This document shows positions 12,632 through 23,300 of a stretch of 64,000 nt of DNA, piece after piece. The translations under genes and the position numbers were made by a program. The notes below the pieces were generated by a model, which worked only from the letters and a program-made list of their open reading frames with translations, made no database searches and had not been told where the DNA came from. Source of the stretch: Antechinus flavipes (lineage: Eukaryota); NCBI RefSeq assembly GCF_016432865.1, contig NC_067401.1, positions 111,104,001 through 111,168,000 on the forward strand, given 5' to 3'. Each line of letters begins with the position of its first letter. Position 1 is the stretch's first letter.

Positions 12632-15600
12632 TCAGAGTCCCCGAAGGAGGCGAAGAAGTGGCAACAGCAGCAAGAGGAGGAGGCAGAGGGGACTTGGGGC
12701 CCGGCCTCCTTGCCATGCGGGCATGCTGCCCCCACCTGGACCCAAGGACTCTGTAACACACAGGCAGGGGGGAGAGGGTTGGAGGGTGATTCTACCACAC
12801 TTAATCCCATCTCCCCTTCCTATTCCTCCCACTCATAATTCTGCCCCTAGTTTAAGAGCCTGTGGCTTCATGGATCTGTTTTCTTATTCGTATAATGAGG
12901 GGATAGTGTTATCTCTATTTTACAAATGAAAAATCTGATGGACTCCCAGGTCACACAGTGAGAATGGTCAGATTTTGAACTCTGGTCTCTAACTTTGAAG
13001 TCCATTTCACTCTGTAGATAATCTCTAAAGTACTTCATGTATTCCTCCTATTTATTCATTTTCATCCTGCTATCTCTTCAACTTCCTATTCAATTCAGCT
13101 GATCCTTCAAAACCAATTATCAGTAGAACACACAACTTTTTTGCCTTTACCCAACCCTTTAGTCCACCCAGAGTTTGCCATTAGTGTTCTACAGTACATC
13201 AAAACATGTCATGCCTTTGACTTACCCTTGGAGACCCCATTTCCTTGTGGAAGCACAAAAGGAGATGCAGTGGTCGGCTTCTCAGCTACAGACAAAGAAG
13301 CCAGTTAGGGACAGATTCCAAATATTCCAGTTTCCCAGAAAACTTCATTCCTGGCGATCATCCCATAAAGTCCCTGCAGTCCCACCTCTCAGACACCCTG
13401 CTACCCTCTAAGAAGTAATTCCCATTCACCGAAGAAAAGACCCATCAAAACACTTACTGGTTTCTTTGCAACACACTGATACCTGCAGCCTCAGACATCG
13501 GACAGAGCTTTCCTGGGTTGGGACAGCTATGGTAGGTAAGCAGGTGGGCAGGAGAAAAAAAGATTTCTTCATGCTTTTTGACATTGCTTCAGACTCTCAC
13601 ATTTTTCTCCCTCTCTTTTCTTAACTTTCTATTTATCAGTCTCCTTCCCAAGATATGGAGCGCTCTAATTTCTCCTTTTCTTCTGGCCACAAATTATCCA
13701 GAAACCTTCCTTTTGCTTCTTTTATTTCACTTTTAGATCTCTCTTCTTTTCCTCCAACTTGCCTACGACCATTCACTATTGTTTCTTTAGGGGCTGTTTG
13801 TTCCCAAATTCTTGACACTTATTTTTCAATACATGAAATCTAGGTCCTTTTTCTCCTTTCTAGACGTCTTTTCTTGGACCTAGATTGTGTCAGGCTTTGA
13901 GGTGGAAAGACATCTCTACTAGGTCTGATTTTTTTCACCCCCTAATCCCCACAGTCTTCTCACCATGGCCCCTCCATTTTACTTACATATCATCTTTACT
14001 AGGTCTGGTTTTTCCCACCCCTAACTCCTACAGTCTTCTCATCATGGCCCCTCTATTTTACTTACATATGTAGTAGTAGGTTTCCCCTGGCAGGAACTCA
14101 AAACCCAATGAGAAAGGTGTGAAGCGCTGGATTTTCTCTGAAAATCGGACTGGACCAAAAGGAGCAAAGGGGCGGGCACACTCCCATCGCTTGTAAGTTT
14201 TTGGGCCCCCAGCTTGGCATGCCTTATACCCATCCAAGTCCACCATGAAAAGAGCAAAAGTCTCAGGGCCCTCAGGTGGCCCTGGACCATCATAATGTGG
14301 ACAGAAGATGTCCAGATAATCGTTAAGGCCCAGCTCTACTGCTGCGTCTCCTCGAAGCAACCTGTGGGGCATGGATCATGCATCAGGATTTTAAGGAAAG
14401 TCTCAGGGGATGGCAGCTAAGGTACCCCTAAATGACCAGGCTTCCCTTTTCTAAAGGGCTCAATCTCCCTTTTGTATATAACTATCCACCATTTATGCCT
14501 GAACATACACTTACAGTCTAAAGGCTCTCTGATCAATCATCAAGCTGCTCCTCCTTGGCAGACAAAGGAAAAAAAAAAAAAAGGCAGAGCAAGAAACAGA
14601 AAAGGAAATAAAGACATTCCTAAAACTACACAATGATTGAAGTATGGAGAGACAGAGATGGGATGAAAATAGAGACCGGAACAGGCAGACTTTTGGACCT
14701 TGACCTGAAACGGTAACAGAAAAACAGTGAGAGACAGATTGGATAGTGACTGACATGGGGGAGGGGGAGTCATCCAGTAGATACCACCAAGGATGTTTGT
14801 CCTTCCTGTCGGTCTGGCTCCATCTGGTAAGCCAGTACCCCACCCCCACTCTAGACCTCCCATTGCCCTTCCCTCTGGGCCATTTAAATTATTCTGGAGC
14901 CCCCTAGACCTTAAAAAGGTGGGAACTAACCCTCACAAGCTCTTATATACTTGAACTTAGGTTAGGCAGGTTGACCTGTTGGAATTCTAGATATTGACAG
15001 ATATAGAGAGAGGGAAAAGGAAGAGAGTCTTCCAGAGAAACAAAGAGAGCAGAGAGACCGAAAAGGCTAGAGCGGTGTGGTAGGAGAGGTATAGGAAGAG
15101 AGACAGACAGTGAAACAAATACAGAGACAGAATAAACTGAAGAGAGGGAAAACTCGAGACAGATGAAGTTGGACAAGGAGGCAGAGAAAGAAACTTAAAA
15201 GACTCAGTCCGACACATTCTTTCACATACACACACACACAATATTATAGTCTGAACACCCTAGATCTCCTTCCTTTTTCTCCATACATCGAACCCTCTGG
15301 GGCCAGCTAGAGGGTTGGGGGGACGTGGAATTAAGGGGCTAACAAAGGGGGCGGGACCTGAAATCTAGGAGATGGGGGCCCCCTCCCCAGCCCCCAGAAC
15401 TTATGTCTGTATCTCACCCTGGGGCTTCACCTCCTCCCGCCCCCTCCCCACGTGGGGGCCAGGGAGTACCTGGGCGGGGGTACTAGCAGTGATGGGGGCG
15501 AGCTTCGCCCCTCCCCCCCACAACCAGCTCAAACAAAGGAGCCCTAGCGCGCGGCTGTCCGGCCCTGGCGGGGACTCGAGAGGAGGGAATGGAGAGTGCA

Positions 15601-15779: not shown

Positions 15780-16050
15780 GGTCTGGTCTGGCCCGGCTCG
15801 GCTTGGCCGGGCTCCGGAGTCAGGGCGAGGAAGGTACAAAGTAGACCCGGGCTGGGGGGTGGGGGGAGGATACAGGGGGAGGGGGGGCATGACGGGAGGG
15901 GGGGGCAGAACAGAATGAGAGGCCACGCCCCGGGTAACTTTCCACCAATTGGGAGGCGACTCCACCTAATCCGACCAACTCCGAGTTAACTCTTCACTAA
16001 CCACAGGCTTCCCCAGACACGCCCCCAACTAAGATTGAGCACAATTTCTC
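15780..16050 (-). promoter_or_regulatory. EFNA4 GC-rich promoter
   Basis: CpG-rich, with KLF/SP GCCACGCCC (~15921), a CCAAT-like element and further GC boxes upstream of the ATG at 15771. Confidence 0.6.
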
Positions 16051-16057
16051 GTGTCTC

Positions 16058-16079
16058 GTGTGTGTGTGTGTGTGTGTGT

Positions 16080-16118
<39 letters not shown>
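16058..16118. repeat. (TG)n microsatellite upstream of EFNA4
   Basis: About 30 units with one interruption. Confidence 0.95.
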
Positions 16119-16119
<1 letters not shown>

Positions 16120-17057
16120 GGGCCAGCTACAACTCCCTGGAGAGGCACATAGGATAGGGTTGCTTTTAGGGGCCTCGACACAACCCCATTGCCCGGAGAA
16201 AGAGAGAGAGAGAAAGGGATGGAACGAGAATCAAGGCTTTCTGCTCCGTCTGGGTCCCAACTCGCGCCCCTCGCTCCTCACCCACGCCCCTTTTTTGCTG
16301 GGCTGCGGCCGGTGTCAGTGAGACCCGAAGGAGCACCAGATCTCCTCCACCACCGCCCTTACCTAGGGCAGGAGGGTGGGGGGAGGGGGGAAAGGGAGGG
16401 GGGAAGTTGCCCCAGTCCGGACTTTGGTGTAATGAGGAGGTGTCAGCGGCACGGTACAAAGCACCTTTGTTCGCGAGCCCTCGGGAAGGGGCGGGAGGAA
16501 AGGGGAGGCAGGTGCGCAGCCCCGGGACCGTGGGAGCCGCCTCACCCCGTCCCGCCCCGCCTCCAGGCTTTGAGAACCCCGTAGCCTCCCCCCTTGTCCC
16601 TTTGCAGACCTCCACTTATGTAGGGGCTCATGGAAGGAGAGGAACAGTGCGGGCACTTTAGACCATCACAGGGCATCTTGACTGCCCCCGGGGCGATCCT
16701 CAGGGCAATAATAGCCAGTAGTTCCATTGCGCTATAATTCCCAATCATGCAGTGGGGAGGGTCAGGGAAAGGGCTGAAGCATCAGTCCAAGCCTTCAAGC
16801 CCACACAGGCTGTGTTGAGGCAGATCGCAGATCGCCGACCGTGGCGTCCGAATTCCACCTCAGACAGGTGGAGGCAAGCGAAGAAACCCAACTACTTTCT
16901 TCCCCCTTCCCCCGCCTTCTCTCGGAGCCATTCTCCGGCCGGGGCAGCATCGTCCTCTGGCGGTCGGAACGGGAACCTCCAAGTTCCCCTCGCGGGACTG
17001 CAGAGGGGATGGGCCCAAGCTTCTCAGAGCAGACGGAGGCTCGGAGGCAGGTCGCAG

Positions 17058-17063
17058 TTTATT
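17058..17063 (-). terminator. ADAM15 polyadenylation signal AATAAA
   Basis: tttatt on plus, about 290 nt past the stop codon. Confidence 0.75.
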
Positions 17064-17349
17064 GTGGCTGAGCCCAAGCAGCACCGGGCCCGCTCCCACC
17101 CCTCCACACCTGGACCCTCTCCCCGCCTCCCCCATCCCAGAGTCAACAGTGCGGGTTCCGTCTCGGGCTTCGCCTTCAGGAACCCCAATAGTGCCTTAAG
17201 AATGCTGCTCCTCCGCTTCTGGACTCGAACCTTCGGAGTCCTAGCAGAGGGTGGGCAGGCTTCCCTTTCACAGGCTCCTCAGGTCCGATGTTGGGGAAAC
17301 GGGGGCCACGGTGACTTATCCAATGTGAGATCACTGTCCCAGGATGAAG

Positions 17350-20300
17350 TCAGACGCGTAGAGCTGCCCCAGAGGCCGCGGGGGGCGGGGGTGCAGGCCT
17401 TGAGATAAAAGAAACGGGGCAGAAGAAAAAGGGGGAAATGTGTACACCTCGCCACCAAAGCGACTTCTCCTTCCTCCTCATCCCCAGCCCCTGCCCTCAC
17501 CTACCTAGAGGGGACGACCAGAGGCACGGAGCTTTCTTCAGCCGGCCCTTCATCTGAGAGGTGCCGTCCCTGGGGGTAGGAGGGCAGCGGCTTCCTTGGA
17601 GGTGGGGGTTTAGCAGGCCCCTGAGACTGACGGAGAGAAGGCAGGATTTATCAGGGGAATGGCCCCAAGAGGTCACCCACCATCCCCGAACAAACCTATT
17701 TCTGCCGACGGTACCTCCTGAGGGGGTACCTCCGCTAGGGAAGGGCCTGGAATTGTGCCCAAGGGGCACCAGGAGCACCTTGCTCCGGCAGCCATTGCTA
17801 CAGGCCATCAGTGCTGCCGCCCCGGAGGGGGAGGGGCTCTGCCCGCCCCCACACCGTTACCTGTGGGCTCCTCACCACCGGGTCGGCGGGTAGCGGACGG
17901 GTGGGGGGGTTGGGTCGGTCGGTCAGTGCAGCCTGGACAGAGAGAGCAGTGCCAGTGAGGAGGAAGCCAGTGGGGAAGTGGGCATGCCGGGTTGTGGGGG
18001 TGGGACACTGCCTTCGATGGGGTTCTGTGCCAACGTGCAGCTTTCGGCTAGTTTGGGGACATGCGCAGGGGTGAGAGTGCATGCGGCCACAGTTTGGCTC
18101 TAGGGATTTCAGGGGCTAGAGTCGTGGGAGAAGGAGAAAGGGGGGGAGGGTGTAATTAAGTCATTTGACGGCAGGTAGGCTGTAGTACCACAGCACACCA
18201 CCAGGTGGCGATACAGACCAAATTAGAAACTACTCTGCCTTAAGGGGCACAGAAGGGTGCCCTTGTCCACCCAGAAGCACAGCCGGGAGGGCAGGGCTAG
18301 GTGCCTTCTTGCTTGTTCCTCATGGAGGTGGGCAGAAGCTGGGCTCCCTAAATCCCTCGGGCCCTCTGCTCAGATTTACCTGTAGTCTCTTGGGCACAGG
18401 GTCCGGCGGGAGCGGCCGGGAGGGGGGGTCAGGGTGACCGAGAGCGCCAGACTGCGGAAAGATCAGGAGAAGCAGAAGGAGCACAGAGAGAGACAAAGAA
18501 GGGGGCGGGAGGAGGGAACAGTGGTGGGGGAGGATGGATCAGAGTTAGAGTCGGAGATATCGAAGGTGGGGGCAGCCAGGGCCTGAGGAGAGCAGGGGCA
18601 TCATGCAATTACTCAGCCGCATTCACGAGTGGGGCGTGCCAGGCTGTGGGCATGCAAACCAATCCCCCACCGCATGCGGCCACTAAGGAGTATCGCCTCC
18701 AGTGCACTCCGGACACAGGAGCACTTGTCAGTCCCTGCAAGAGTCGGGCTGTGCACGTGGGGCCCCAAGGGGCACCGATCCTTTTTACCCAATCTTGCAG
18801 CCAGAGGGCATCTGGGCCTCCGGATCCAGGATGGCATCCCTGAAGTGCCAGTGAGTAGCAGGCACAACACCCTCATCTCAATTAATGGGTTGTGCTAAAC
18901 AACACTTCCACTGGTCACCCATCTTAGGTTTCCCACCCCAGGTAGGATTTGACTCCTCAACCTCCTTGGAGCCGGCAATTGGGCCTCGGGACAGTGTCAG
19001 CCACTCTCAGACCGTCCAGAACCTGCTGAAATAGGCACTAAGAACCCCGCTGGGGCCACGGCGGGGAGGGCAGCTCAGTTGGACTTGGGGCAGAGTGGGC
19101 CGGTCTCCCTGCCCCTCCCTCCACAAAGCCCCGGAGCTCACCTTGGTGCTGGACAGCAGCTGGAGTTCTGTGGCCTGAGCCCTCTGAGGTGGACCTGGAC
19201 GTTCAGGGGGGCCAGATGGGGACGTCCTGGGGTAGTTGAAGGGGAAGCAAGTATTATCTACTCAGAAACAATCTCGTGAGAGGGTCTGCCCTTTGTGAAA
19301 TCTGTAGAGACCAAGGAGGGGGTGTGGAGGCAACATCCCATGGTGAAAGAATGGAGAGGAGCAGTCTGACAGGGCCCACTTAGGCTGGATGTGAGGGAAG
19401 GGCCCCGCTTACCTGTACCCATTGGCACAGACACCCCCGTGGAGAAATCGAACCTGGGCCTCTGCAGTATCCCTGGAGGGGGTGGGAGTCGGGTCAGTGC
19501 GGGAAGGGGAAGGGCAAGAGGTTTTGGTGGCGCAGGGGTCAGCACCAGGGACGAAGGCTCAGAGCCAGAGGTCTTAGGGGATCCATGGGTCCCATACCTA
19601 TACTGGGAACTGGTCCCCTTAAACTGGCAGAGTCTGCGGTGGAGATGGGTCCGGTGCCAATAGCAAGCTCCGAGAAGCATCAGCAGGGCCAGGAGGAGGA
19701 GGCTGAGGAGCAGTCCTGTGGTCAGGCCACCATTTGCTGTTGGACATAAAGCCAGAGCCAGGACGAGGAATGGAGATAGAGGTCAACAGGTCAGAAAAAG
19801 TAGGAGTGGCCACTACTAACTAGCCAGGGGCACCCTTAGTCTTCCTAGGTCTCACTCCGGAAGCCCCCCCTTGCTCCGATATCCTGGAGATCTCAAATCT
19901 AGGTTGGGATCAGTCTCTTTCAGACATGTTGCTCCTCCTCTGCCCTTCTGCACCCTCATTCCCACTGAATACCTTTGGGCTGCTGGCCCAGGGCCCCACT
20001 GTCCACACTGCCCCCAAAGCCTTCCTTTGAGCAATCTGGAGGCGCCCAGCCCTGGTCACAGTGGCAATGTCCATTGCTATTGCAAACCTGAAGAGGAAAG
20101 CAAAGGGAGGAAGGAATTAAGCACGTATTAAGTCCCTCGGTGTGTTGGGCACTTTACAAATTTTAGGTCACTTGATCCTCACATCAGAACCCGAAGAAGT
20201 GGGTGCTATTATTGCCTCAATTTAGAGTGGAGGAAACTGAGAGACGGTGCCCAGGGTTACACAGCTAATAGGTGTCTGAGATAGGATTTGAACTCAGCTC

Positions 20301-23300
20301 TTCCTGGCTGCCTCTAAAGGTGCTTCAGGGAGGAAGGGCCCTTAGGAAGCATTTTCCCCAATGTCATTCCAGCTTTAGCAAACATAAAAATGTCCAAACA
20401 TCAGGAGTTTTGTGGAGGTCACGAAAAGAGGGATTTGCAAGAACAGAGTGCACAGAACTAGGGAACCAGTTCTAGCACCTCCCCAGTCCCCTTCAGTTTT
20501 CCCCAGTCTGCTCTGGGGAGCAGCCCCCCTCCCCTCTGCTCACCCCATGCCCATGGCATTTGCTCCGACACTCCTCTGCTCCCAGAAGTGCCACTGGCTG
20601 GCACCGCTGGTCAATGCAGACCTGCAATGGATGGAGGAGACAGCCCTTTAACATTTCACAGAATCTCAGCATAGAGAAGGGTTTCGAAGGTCATTGGGTC
20701 TAATGCCCACAGGATGTCTGACTCACTCACCTGGCCAGGGGCACAAGCAGTGCCTGTCAGAGCCAGAAAGGGCTGGGCCACATCGTTGCCCAGGTCTAGG
20801 TGTGTCCATCGGCAGGTCTGGTGTGTTCCATTGGCCTCAATGGTCTCTGTGATTGTCTCCTGAGCAGTGCCCAATAGAGGGTGGACACTACCACCTTGGC
20901 ACTGGAGTTGCCCACAGTTGGCATCTCTATGAGGGATGGGCTAGAGAGTCAGGGGAAGGGAAGGAACTGGAATCATAGGGGGGGAGGGGGAAGGGTCAGA
21001 AAGATGGGGGAGCAAGGGCCGGGGTTGGGGTGGGAGGTACTCACTCACCGAGGGGCACATGGCACATAAGTACCATTGTACTGTTTCCCACAGTTCCCAA
21101 AGCCATCTCCTCGTGTGTTGGCAGCTTGGAGACAGGCAGGGGTTGCAGAGCGGGCACCAGGACCCCAGAGTGCCTGGCACTGAGCAGCGTAAGAGGCACA
21201 GTGCCCAGCAGCACAGACAGCTTTGCCCCCTGCACAGGGCTCACCATCCCCTAGGCTGACATCCGAGGGACACTGGGCACTATCCCCTGAGCAGAATTCA
21301 GGCAGGTCACAATCCCCCCGTACTGGGCGGCATAGCCATCCCGCCGGGCGCAGCTGCGGGGAAAGAGAGCGCCAGTCAGAGGAGACCCTTCTGGTCTGAT
21401 GCCATTTCTCCATCACTACACTCCCACCCCCAGTTACACTCCCAGCATTCCCCTCTGCCAGCCCTAGGCCCAAACCTGGCAATCTTGACAGCAGAGACCG
21501 TCGGAAGCACATTGAGCCCCGGGCATCAGCTGGCAGCTGGAGGCATTACAGCAGGGATCAGAACATTCCTGGGTGTGGAACAGAAAGAGACAGAGCGGCA
21601 AGGTGGGGGGCGGGAAAGAGCGCAGATGAGGAAGATGGAGAAGTAAACCTGAAATTGTGGGGGAGAAGACTCGGGGTTCAGGGGAGACAAGTTCCAGAGC
21701 ATTGAAAGACAGCCCTCTGAGAGTCTGGGGCCAAGGAGCGGCAATGGGGGAGTCCCAGGGAGAGAAGGAAAGGTGGGAGCCCCTCACCTCCCAGAAGCCA
21801 CAGTCACACTGCTCGCCAGGCTCTACAAATAAATTCCCGCATCGAGGGGGGCGAGGGGCCAGCTGAGCAGGCCGAGAAAAGAGGCAGCCCCCTGCTCCCC
21901 TCAAAAGCGCCTTCTCCAAAGCTTCTCTGCTGCAGCTGCTAAAACTCAGACCAGGCAGGAACCTGGAGATGAAGGGACAAGGGGACCAAGGTGAAAGGGA
22001 GCCCTTTCCCCTTGTCCCCCCCCACCCAGGGCCCTTCCTCACTCCCTGGTTTGGAGAGCAGGGTGTCACTCACGCTGTGGCAGCCTCCATGATACAGCTC
22101 TTGGCAGGCGGCTGGCCTGGGCATGGGCAGTTGCCTCCTGGGGGATCATGTGCCAGGCCCAGGCTGTGCCCCAGCTCATGGGCCATGGTGGATGCTACAC
22201 CCAGGATGCTCACTGAGTGGTCCTAGGGGAAGAAGGAGTCAGGGTGGACAGGTGAATGCATAGACTCAAGGGAAAGGAGGTAAGAGGGGGCCACTCTGGA
22301 ATTTTGATTCATTGTCCACTTAGATGTGGAAGGAAGCCTTTGGGAGAGAAAATAGCTCCTCCTTGAAGCCATCCTATACAGGGTATTCTCATTTTCCCTT
22401 TACCGTCTCACCAATTCATTATGGGTTTGAAATGAAAGGGACCTTAGGTCACAGAATGTCAGTACTGGTCATACTACAGCACTGTAACATCTGCTTATGT
22501 TAAAAATAATAGATAATAATAATTAAAGTTGGAAAGCATTAGAGATCAGCTGGTCAAACACAGATCTCTTTAAAAATGAGGGAAATGATGCCCAATAAAG
22601 CTCTGGCCCAAGATCATATTGGCTCCCCTTCAGTCAGGACTTCTGACTTGATGCTGTGATCTGTCCCCTACATCTTTCTATTTTCTTTCTGGTTCCCCAA
22701 ATGTCATGAAGACAGAATCCATTATCTTATACTTCCCTTATATCCAAACTGGGCCCACATCAGAGGGCACAGAGGATATACATGCATCCAGAGCTAAAAG
22801 GGATCTAAGAAACTATCTAGTCCAAGCTTCAGCAAACTACTGGGGCAGCAGCTGGGTGGCCCAGTGGATAAAATGCTAGGCTGAGCATCAGGAAGATTCA
22901 AATTCAAATATGACCTCAGGTACTAGTTGTGTGATCCTGGGCAAGTCATTTAACCTGTGTGCCTCCGTTTCCTTATTTGTAAAATGGGGGGGGGGGCAAT
23001 TAATAATAGCACCTACCTCCAGGGTTGTTGTGAGGCTCAACACAGATAAGCACAGTGCTTGGCATATAGGGAGCACTATATCAAGGTTAGCTATTATTTT
23101 TTATCATTATGACCCATGGCCTACAGGCTGTTTTTGTAAAATCATGAGTTAGGGTATTACATTTTTAAACATAATAAAACTTTATCTTAAAATGAAAAAA
23201 AAAAACCTTCTTCTGTACAAAAACAGATGGATTGTAGTTTGGCAACCTTTTCATTTTACAGATGAGGAAATTAAGGCCCCCCAATGAGATCATTTGTCCA

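What the first reader, a model, noticed from the sequence alone, without database searches (positions are those of the whole stretch)
19413..19472. Candidate novel 60-nt cassette exon in the ADAM15 cytoplasmic tail
Seen (minus strand): branch CTGAC with the A 21 nt upstream, a pyrimidine tract, acceptor ctccag|G, 60 nt, and donor CAG|GTAAGC. It is phase 2-2, exactly matching the flanking exons, with introns of 125 and 186 nt. It adds [20 protein letters not shown] after QYR, giving a second YR motif and a juxtamembrane Cys. Known: human tail isoforms (exons 19-21) set SH3/Src-family binding; I recall no human exon at this position. Inference: a marsupial-specific, or placental-lost, signalling module.
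Basis: partly seen in the sequence, partly recalled or inferred. Interest (0 to 1): 0.7.

Follow-up and report, generated by a model that had tools for sequence, protein, structure and literature searches.

The report
Old ADAM15 tail exon, lost in placentals
The 60-base segment is a real, spliced-in coding exon of the marsupial ADAM15 gene, but it is already in public gene models and is an ancient tetrapod exon that placental mammals lost, not a marsupial novelty.

Summary
On the minus strand, 19472..19413 is a 60-nt in-frame exon. It has an ag|G acceptor and a CAG|gtaagc donor, and it is flanked by introns of 125 and 186 nt.

RNA contigs from four runs in four studies of a related dasyurid splice it in at exactly these borders. 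Their variants match the Tasmanian devil genome 40 of 40 times.

The exon is not novel. RefSeq, Ensembl and GenBank models of Antechinus (exon-core matches 100% identical to the window), devil, dunnart, koala, wombat, glider, bilby and opossum already contain [20 protein letters not shown]. Bilby and devil models without it show that it can be skipped.

It is not marsupial-specific. A homologous cassette of 45-63 nt sits at the same junction in birds, crocodilians, squamates, turtles and salamanders, with a shared core AE-x-x-VRFL. I confirmed it as a separate phase 2-2 exon in alligator, owl and gecko DNA.

All 120 placental protein clusters examined lack it. The matching intron of elephant, cow and pika holds no frame, splice sites or significant similarity.

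Interest is modest.

The parts
19598..19736 (-). ADAM15 transmembrane and juxtamembrane exon (equivalent of human exon 18). It ends ...[10 protein letters not shown] + AG, phase 2.
   Evidence: RNA-contig pieces cover 19597-19736 in all four runs. 100% match to Antechinus ADAM15 P0382.
19473..19597 (-). Upstream intron of 125 nt, with a branch-like cactgac (A at 19494), a pyrimidine tract and an ag acceptor.
   Evidence: Joint 19471->19597 'skips 125' in four of four runs.
19413..19472 (-). The 60-nt phase 2-2 cassette exon, encoding (R)[19 protein letters not shown](R).
   Evidence: The peptide is present in marsupial models. Identity is 59/60 to devil and 55/60 to koala, against 69-78% in the flanking koala intron. 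Homologous exons occur in alligator, owl and gecko DNA.
19227..19412 (-). Downstream intron of 186 nt. It contains an alternative acceptor (ag at 19303-19302) that is used in devil and dunnart models. In this window that extension is closed by an in-frame TGA at 19264-19262.
   Evidence: Joint 19225->19412 'skips 186'. Devil X1/X4 and Sminthopsis X3 peptides. Devil DNA has TGG where the window has TGA.
19142..19226 (-). 85-nt exon, the equivalent of human exon 19. It carries the first SH3-type proline cluster, [28 protein letters not shown].
   Evidence: Human exon 19 behaviour is described in PMC2148059.
18380..18451 (-). 72-nt alternative tail exon (equivalent of human exon 20), [24 protein letters not shown].
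   Evidence: Joints 18451->19142 and 17626->19142.
17861..17932 (-). 72-nt alternative tail exon (equivalent of human exon 21a), [24 protein letters not shown].
   Evidence: Joint 17626->17861.
17505..17626 (-). Penultimate tail exon, [15 protein letters not shown]...VVPSR.
   Evidence: Joint 17398->17505 in four of four runs.
17350..17398 (-). Coding part of the last exon, [15 protein letters not shown] followed by a stop.
   Evidence: Identical to the C-terminus of P0382.

Best explanation
Window 19472..19413 (minus strand) is a genuine protein-coding exon of ADAM15, and the window's exon cores match Antechinus ADAM15 models. The exon is 60 nt long and phase 2-2, so both inclusion and skipping keep the reading frame. 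When included, it inserts 20 residues ([20 protein letters not shown]) between the juxtamembrane ...[11 protein letters not shown] and the first proline-rich SH3-binding cluster. In dasyurid tissues inclusion is the dominant assembled form, and skipped isoforms exist in marsupial gene models, so it behaves as a mostly-included cassette. It is the marsupial orthologue of an ancient tetrapod cassette exon of 45-63 nt at the same junction and in the same phase. The shared core is AE-(T/A/S)-(R/Q)-V-(R/Q)-F-L. The cassette is retained in salamanders, squamates, turtles, crocodilians, birds and marsupials. On the placental stem it decayed into ordinary intron. This much is shown. What follows is inferred. 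Because the conserved half is a short acidic-then-hydrophobic stretch in a disordered tail, it most likely acts as a short linear motif for partner binding or sorting, or as a spacer that sets the distance of the SH3-binding clusters from the membrane. The marsupial-only Cys and YR are lineage decoration.
For: Gene identity: Reprolysin, Disintegrin and ADAM_CR hits on exon translations, with an ephrin gene downstream and a RING-finger-containing ORF upstream. Exon-core matches to Antechinus ADAM15 XP_051849856 (P0382) are 100% identical.

Splicing: contigs in four RNA runs from four studies carry both joints of the exon at the depth of the main transcript. All 40 of the 40 listed contig variants equal the devil genome base.

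Annotation: the peptide is present in models of Antechinus, Sarcophilus, Sminthopsis, Phascolarctos, Vombatus, Petaurus, Macrotis, Monodelphis and Gracilinanus. Skipped isoforms are Macrotis X3 and X7 and Sarcophilus 10-T10.

Selection: the exon is 59/60 identical to devil and 55/60 to koala, with 4 synonymous and 1 non-synonymous change and no indels. The flanking koala intron is 69-78% identical with many gaps.

Deep homology: isoform pairs with and without the cassette exist in birds and crocodilians, and the cassette is present in squamates, turtles and salamanders. It is a separate phase 2-2 exon with ag and gt borders in alligator (60 nt), owl (54 nt) and gecko (51 nt) DNA. By my count, 11 of 20 residues are identical between marsupial and alligator without gaps, and an invariant nucleotide core appears in alignment A3.

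Placental loss: all 120 placental ADAM15 clusters go straight from QYR to AAQSGPP.... The introns of elephant, cow and pika have no matching frame or splice sites, and local alignment to the exon is not above shuffled controls.
Against: No raw reads and no RNA from the window's own species were available. The RNA evidence is assembled contigs of a sister genus, which cannot give inclusion levels and tend to drop minor isoforms. Skipping in marsupials rests on gene models only. No monotreme model was retrieved, and the insert-centred search scored only 11 candidates, so it is blind beyond marsupials. Anuran models lack the cassette, and I did not check whether that is loss or missing annotation. 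Only the best 120 of 285 placental clusters and three placental introns were inspected. The functional part (linear motif or spacer) has no direct evidence, and no known motif class fitted all lineages.
Confidence: 0.9

Rival explanations
1. The exon is effectively constitutive in dasyurids, including the window's species. On this view the 'cassette' label is wrong here, and the skipped forms in bilby and devil models are rare splicing noise.
For: Only the inclusion joints appear in the contigs of all four RNA runs, and no 19225->19597 joint is seen. Both Antechinus isoforms retrieved (X2, X3) include the exon. The donor CAG|gtaagc is strong.
Against: Contigs drop minor variants, as the tool text states. 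Skipped isoforms are annotated in Macrotis (X3, X7) and Sarcophilus (10-T10), and both forms are widely annotated in birds and crocodilians. Only 15 of the 75 cluster members were listed.
Confidence: 0.3
2. The exon is a marsupial-specific exonisation of intronic sequence.
For: No placental protein has it. The Cys and the second YR occur only in marsupials.
Against: Homologous cassettes at the same junction and phase occur in alligator, owl, gecko, turtles and salamanders. By my count 11 of 20 residues are identical between marsupial and alligator, and there is an invariant nucleotide core.
Confidence: 0.02
3. Placentals still have the exon, but it is unannotated or used only rarely.
For: Only the best 120 of 285 placental clusters and three introns were inspected. 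Kleino et al. note conserved sequence in the introns that flank the alternative exons (PMC2148059).
Against: The elephant, cow and pika introns show no open frame with the motif and no ag...gt pair at the aligned position. They have frame-breaking indels, and identity in the exon columns (39-49%) is no higher than in the surrounding intron columns. Local alignment scores are within the shuffle range.
Confidence: 0.03

Closest known systems
Annotated marsupial ADAM15 isoforms, for example Antechinus XP_051849856.1 and XP_051849857.1, Sarcophilus XP_012403632.1 and Monodelphis UniProt F6U405
   Same: They carry the identical 20-residue insert at the identical junction. Exon-core matches between the Antechinus models and the window are 100% identical.
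   Different: Nothing differs. This is the same exon, so the finding is a rediscovery of an annotated feature.
The cassette at the same junction of sauropsid and salamander ADAM15. Examples: birds AETRVRFLGPEAPDGWS, crocodilians TEAETRVRFLGAGVSADQS, geckos AEAESRVQFLHPSEQR, salamanders EGSAETRVRFLGDGASVDRP.
   Same: It has the same position after ...CQY, the same phase 2-2, and a length that is a multiple of three. It shares the AE-x-x-VRFL core, and isoforms with and without it are annotated.
   Different: Length ranges from 45 to 63 nt. The C-terminal half is not conserved and has no Cys or YR. In sauropsids the junction codon changes from R to S on inclusion.
Human ADAM15 alternative tail exons 19, 20a/b and 21a/b (Kleino et al. 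2007, PMC2148059)
   Same: These are also modular alternative exons in the cytoplasmic tail. The marsupial equivalents of exons 19-21 are present, and exons 20 and 21 are alternatively joined in the RNA contigs.
   Different: This cassette lies upstream of exon 19, in what is intron 18 in human. It carries no PxxP cluster and has no placental counterpart.

Membership tests
ADAM15 (metargidin) orthologue | Reprolysin metalloprotease, disintegrin and ADAM cysteine-rich domains | tested here: met
   Pfam hits on exon translations: PF01421 at 1.3e-10, PF00200 at 4.1e-08 and PF08516 at 4.1e-18.
ADAM15 (metargidin) orthologue | Proline-rich tail with the [27 protein letters not shown] and [11 protein letters not shown] clusters, and best matches to named ADAM15 proteins | tested here: met
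   Exon cores are 100% identical to Antechinus ADAM15.
ADAM15 (metargidin) orthologue | Conserved neighbourhood, with EFNA4 downstream and DCST1 upstream | tested here: met
   An ephrin domain lies at 14061-14375. The alligator locus has DCST1 directly upstream of ADAM15. Synteny with EFNA4 is described in PMC3055250. In the window itself, the upstream ORF showed only a weak RING-finger hit below the curated cut-off.
Cassette (alternatively included) exon | Canonical splice sites and a length divisible by three, so both forms stay in frame | tested here: met
   ag|G ... CAG|gt, 60 nt, phase 2-2.
Cassette (alternatively included) exon | Transcripts that include the exon | tested here: met
   Both joints are present in four of four RNA runs.
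Cassette (alternatively included) exon | Transcripts that skip the exon in the same lineage | tested here: inconclusive
   Skipped models exist for Macrotis X3 and X7 and Sarcophilus 10-T10. No skipping joint appears in the contigs, and no raw reads were available.
Human ADAM15 alternative exons 19-21 | Position downstream of exon 18 at the exon 19, 20 or 21 slots, and PxxP content | tested here: not met
   The exon lies between the exon 18 and exon 19 equivalents and has no PxxP motif.

The most novel reading that the evidence does not exclude
The AE-x-x-VRFL cassette is a functional juxtamembrane linear motif for sorting or partner docking. It has been kept for more than 300 million years in non-placental tetrapods. 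Its loss on the placental stem changed how the ADAM15 tail is read by its SH3 partners. This evolutionary event and the motif appear not to be described in the papers I could search.
Probability: 0.3. Interest if true: 0.5.

Novelty: already known. Interest (0 to 1): 0.3.

Why it matters
The exon itself adds nothing to what the databases already hold. It is annotated in the same species and in eight other marsupial genera.

The comparative result is of modest interest. Work on ADAM15 tail splicing has been done in human and rodents, which have lost one tail module that salamanders, reptiles, birds and marsupials all keep.

The cassette lies between the membrane and the SH3-binding clusters that determine ADAM15 partner choice. 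This gives a simple testable contrast: the tail with the cassette against the tail without it. It is also a clean example of a coding exon decaying to intron background in one mammalian lineage.

Tried and rejected
1. An alignment of P0026 with 17 window exon pieces (A1), meant to reach marsupial proteins. MAFFT scrambled the short pieces, so I discarded the alignment and never searched with it.

The joined step was left out.

3. The first tail search with a placental query listed only placentals. Marsupials were reached only with a bird query.

4. The insert-centred search with the Antechinus protein had only 11 candidates and 3 marsupial hits. It therefore says nothing about monotremes or distant lineages.

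5. Locus look-ups failed or gave no DNA for sloth, devil X2, bilby and Gracilinanus.

6. Elephant, cow and pika were used instead.

7. Motif ideas I considered and rejected because they do not hold across lineages:
- [DE]xxxL[LI] sorting signal: the spacing is wrong.
- RxR retention signal: present in birds, crocodilians and salamanders, absent in marsupials and geckos.
- LIR motif.
- NPxY or YxxPhi motif.
- Palmitoylation of the Cys: the Cys is marsupial-only.

8. A regex search of 150 ADAM-family representatives found no paralogue with the motif.

9. Rfam gave no hit in 17000-21000.

Full report
**Observation.**
- The transmembrane exon ends ...CAG TAT AG|gt at 19598.
- A 125-nt intron follows (19597..19473). 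It holds cactgac with the A at 19494, which leaves 21 nt between that A and the exon, and then a pyrimidine tract ending ctccag.
- The exon runs 19472..19413 (60 nt) and ends CAG|gtaagc.
- A 186-nt intron separates it from the next exon, which starts at 19226.
- The split codons AG|G on both sides give R. The exon reads [19 protein letters not shown] plus the shared R.

**The gene.** Open stretches on the minus strand between about 27300 and 17350 carry Reprolysin, Disintegrin and ADAM_CR domains. An ephrin domain lies downstream. A tblastn of a placental ADAM15 (P0026, Aotus) lays out the exons in order. Exon-core matches to the Antechinus ADAM15 model XP_051849856.1 (P0382) are 100% identical. 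The window is therefore Antechinus or something nearly identical. The tail exons are:
- TM exon, 19736-19598
- the cassette, 19472-19413
- an 85-nt exon-19 equivalent, 19226-19142
- two 72-nt exons, 18451-18380 and 17932-17861
- 17626-17505
- the last exon, from 17398

**RNA evidence.** I laid four of them, from four studies, on 17300-20200. In every run one contig carries both joints: 19225->19412 (skips 186) and 19471->19597 (skips 125). The depth is that of the main ADAM15 contig (25 to 217). No contig shows the skipping joint 19225->19597.

The contigs differ from the window by 1-6%. All 40 listed differences equal the base in the Tasmanian devil locus L004. The RNA therefore behaves as devil RNA. 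That makes it cross-species support for the splice sites, not expression data for the window's own species. Contigs cannot give inclusion levels and tend to drop minor forms.

The same table shows alternative joining of the exon-20 and exon-21 equivalents (17626->19142, 17626->17861, 18451->19142). This parallels the human pattern described by Kleino et al. (PMC2148059).

**Is it novel?** No. I searched exon by exon and by reference, and I built no joined model.
- A representative search with the disintegrin/cysteine-rich exon gave a placental ADAM15.
- A tail search with that protein listed 120 placental clusters.
- A tail search with a bird isoform reached marsupials.
- Cluster listings show the same 20 residues, with E->V in Diprotodontia and G->V in bilby. 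They occur in models of Antechinus (X2, X3), Sarcophilus (X2), Sminthopsis (X3, X7), Phascolarctos (X1, X4, X5), Vombatus (X1, X4), Petaurus (X3, X4), Macrotis (X1, X2, X4-X6) and Monodelphis (UniProt F6U405), plus an unnamed 557-residue "-like" model.
- Gracilinanus appears.
- Isoforms that go straight from QYR to the exon-19 peptide exist for Macrotis (X3, X7) and Sarcophilus (10-T10). The exon can therefore be skipped.

**Is it marsupial-specific?** No. The same junction carries a related insert in the following lineages:

| Lineage | Sequence at the junction | Skipped partner annotated |
|---|---|---|
| Many birds | QYS AETRVRFLGPEAPDGWSG ISQ | yes, QYR ISQ |
| Crocodilians | TEAETRVRFLGAGVSADQSR | yes |
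| Geckos and other squamates | AEAESRVQFLHPSEQRG; python ADPESRVEFLHPAGR | yes (Paroedura, Crotalus) |
| Turtles | T(KPGP)QVQLLSAGVSADPNG | yes (Pangshura isoform 6-T6) |
| Salamanders | EGSAETRVRFLGDGASVDRPR; DELAETQVRFLGEGAASNKNW | none among listed isoforms |

Anuran models lack the insert.

At the DNA level it is a separate exon with ag and gt borders and phase 2 on both sides. It is 60 nt in alligator (L005), 54 nt in owl (L006) and 51 nt in gecko (L008). By my count, marsupial and alligator peptides share 11 of 20 residues without a gap. An alignment of six amniote exons has an invariant nucleotide core under AE..VRFL. The conserved part is the N-terminal half.

**Constraint within marsupials.**

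| Comparison with the window | Exon identity | Substitutions | Flanking intron identity |
|---|---|---|---|
| Devil | 59/60 | 1 synonymous, at 19466 | 89-94% |
| Koala | 55/60 | 4 synonymous, 1 non-synonymous, no indel | 69-78%, with dozens of gap columns |

**Placentals.** All 120 placental clusters listed go directly from QYR to AAQSGPP... One goat model with a retained intron is the only oddity. I fetched the intron from elephant (L001), cow (L002) and pika (L007).
- In the MAFFT alignment with three marsupials, the columns under the exon are 39-49% identical. That is no better than the surrounding intron columns.
- Those columns contain frame-breaking gaps, and there is no ag or gt at the borders.
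- No frame in any of the three introns encodes the motif.
- Local alignment of the marsupial or alligator exon to the introns scores within the range of shuffled exons.

The exon has therefore decayed to background in placentals. This supports loss on the placental stem. Monotremes were not reached: the last protein search scored only 11 candidates.

**Mechanism.** The following is shown: this is an in-frame, mostly included cassette. It inserts 15-21 residues (20 in marsupials) between the basic juxtamembrane segment and the first SH3-binding proline cluster.

The following is inferred. The AE-x-x-VRFL core has persisted in an otherwise fast-evolving, disordered tail. That points to a short linear motif for partner docking or sorting, or to a spacer of constrained composition. 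None of the standard motif classes I tried fits all lineages, so the function is an open guess (about 0.3).

**Literature.** Three papers either describe only human exons 19-21 or compare ADAM15 across vertebrates without mentioning this exon in the passages I read. They are Kleino 2007 on the human gene (PMC2148059) and the two vertebrate ADAM surveys (PMC3055250 and PMC4550289). Two further keyword searches found nothing on it. The exon is therefore in the databases, but as far as I could search it has not been discussed in print.

**Verdict.** It is an already annotated feature with a modestly interesting evolutionary history. Nothing else was found on either strand here, and Rfam gave no hit in 17000-21000.

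Noticed in passing
window 19227-19301 (minus strand); in-frame TGA at 19264-19262: An alternative acceptor 75 nt upstream of the exon-19 equivalent is used in devil (X1, X4) and Sminthopsis (X3) models. It adds [25 protein letters not shown]. In this window the codon that is W (TGG) in devil is TGA, so the extended form would end the protein here.
   Followed up: partly
window about 18960-19022 (minus strand), inside the intron after the exon-19 equivalent: An alternative exon follows the acceptor ttcagcag and reads [10 protein letters not shown]...QGG then a stop. The same short-tail ending (...STK(Q)[21 protein letters not shown]) is annotated in wombat, bilby and glider isoforms. One RNA run (X12) shows the joint 19020->19140. 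This isoform would lack all proline clusters downstream of the first one.
   Followed up: partly
window 21048-21356 and 22073-22222 (minus strand): The marsupial ADAM15 keeps both the RGD in the disintegrin loop ([14 protein letters not shown]), as in human but unlike mouse, and an intact HELGH zinc motif. The zinc motif is unlike the HQxGH reported for frogs and some birds (PMC3055250, PMC4550289).
   Followed up: no
window 17626->19142, 17626->17861 and 18451->19142 joints: The devil RNA contigs join the exon-20 and exon-21 equivalents alternatively, including skipping both. The modular tail splicing known from human ADAM15 is therefore shared with marsupials.
   Followed up: partly
window about 16030-16130 (minus-strand translation THTHTH...): A CA/TG dinucleotide microsatellite lies between ADAM15 and the ephrin gene.
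   Followed up: no
Protein P0213 (goat ADAM15, UniRef): This model reads through the exon 18 donor into intron 18 (QYSTNTSLPTSVFLLPPP...). It looks like an annotation artefact and not an extra exon.
   Followed up: no
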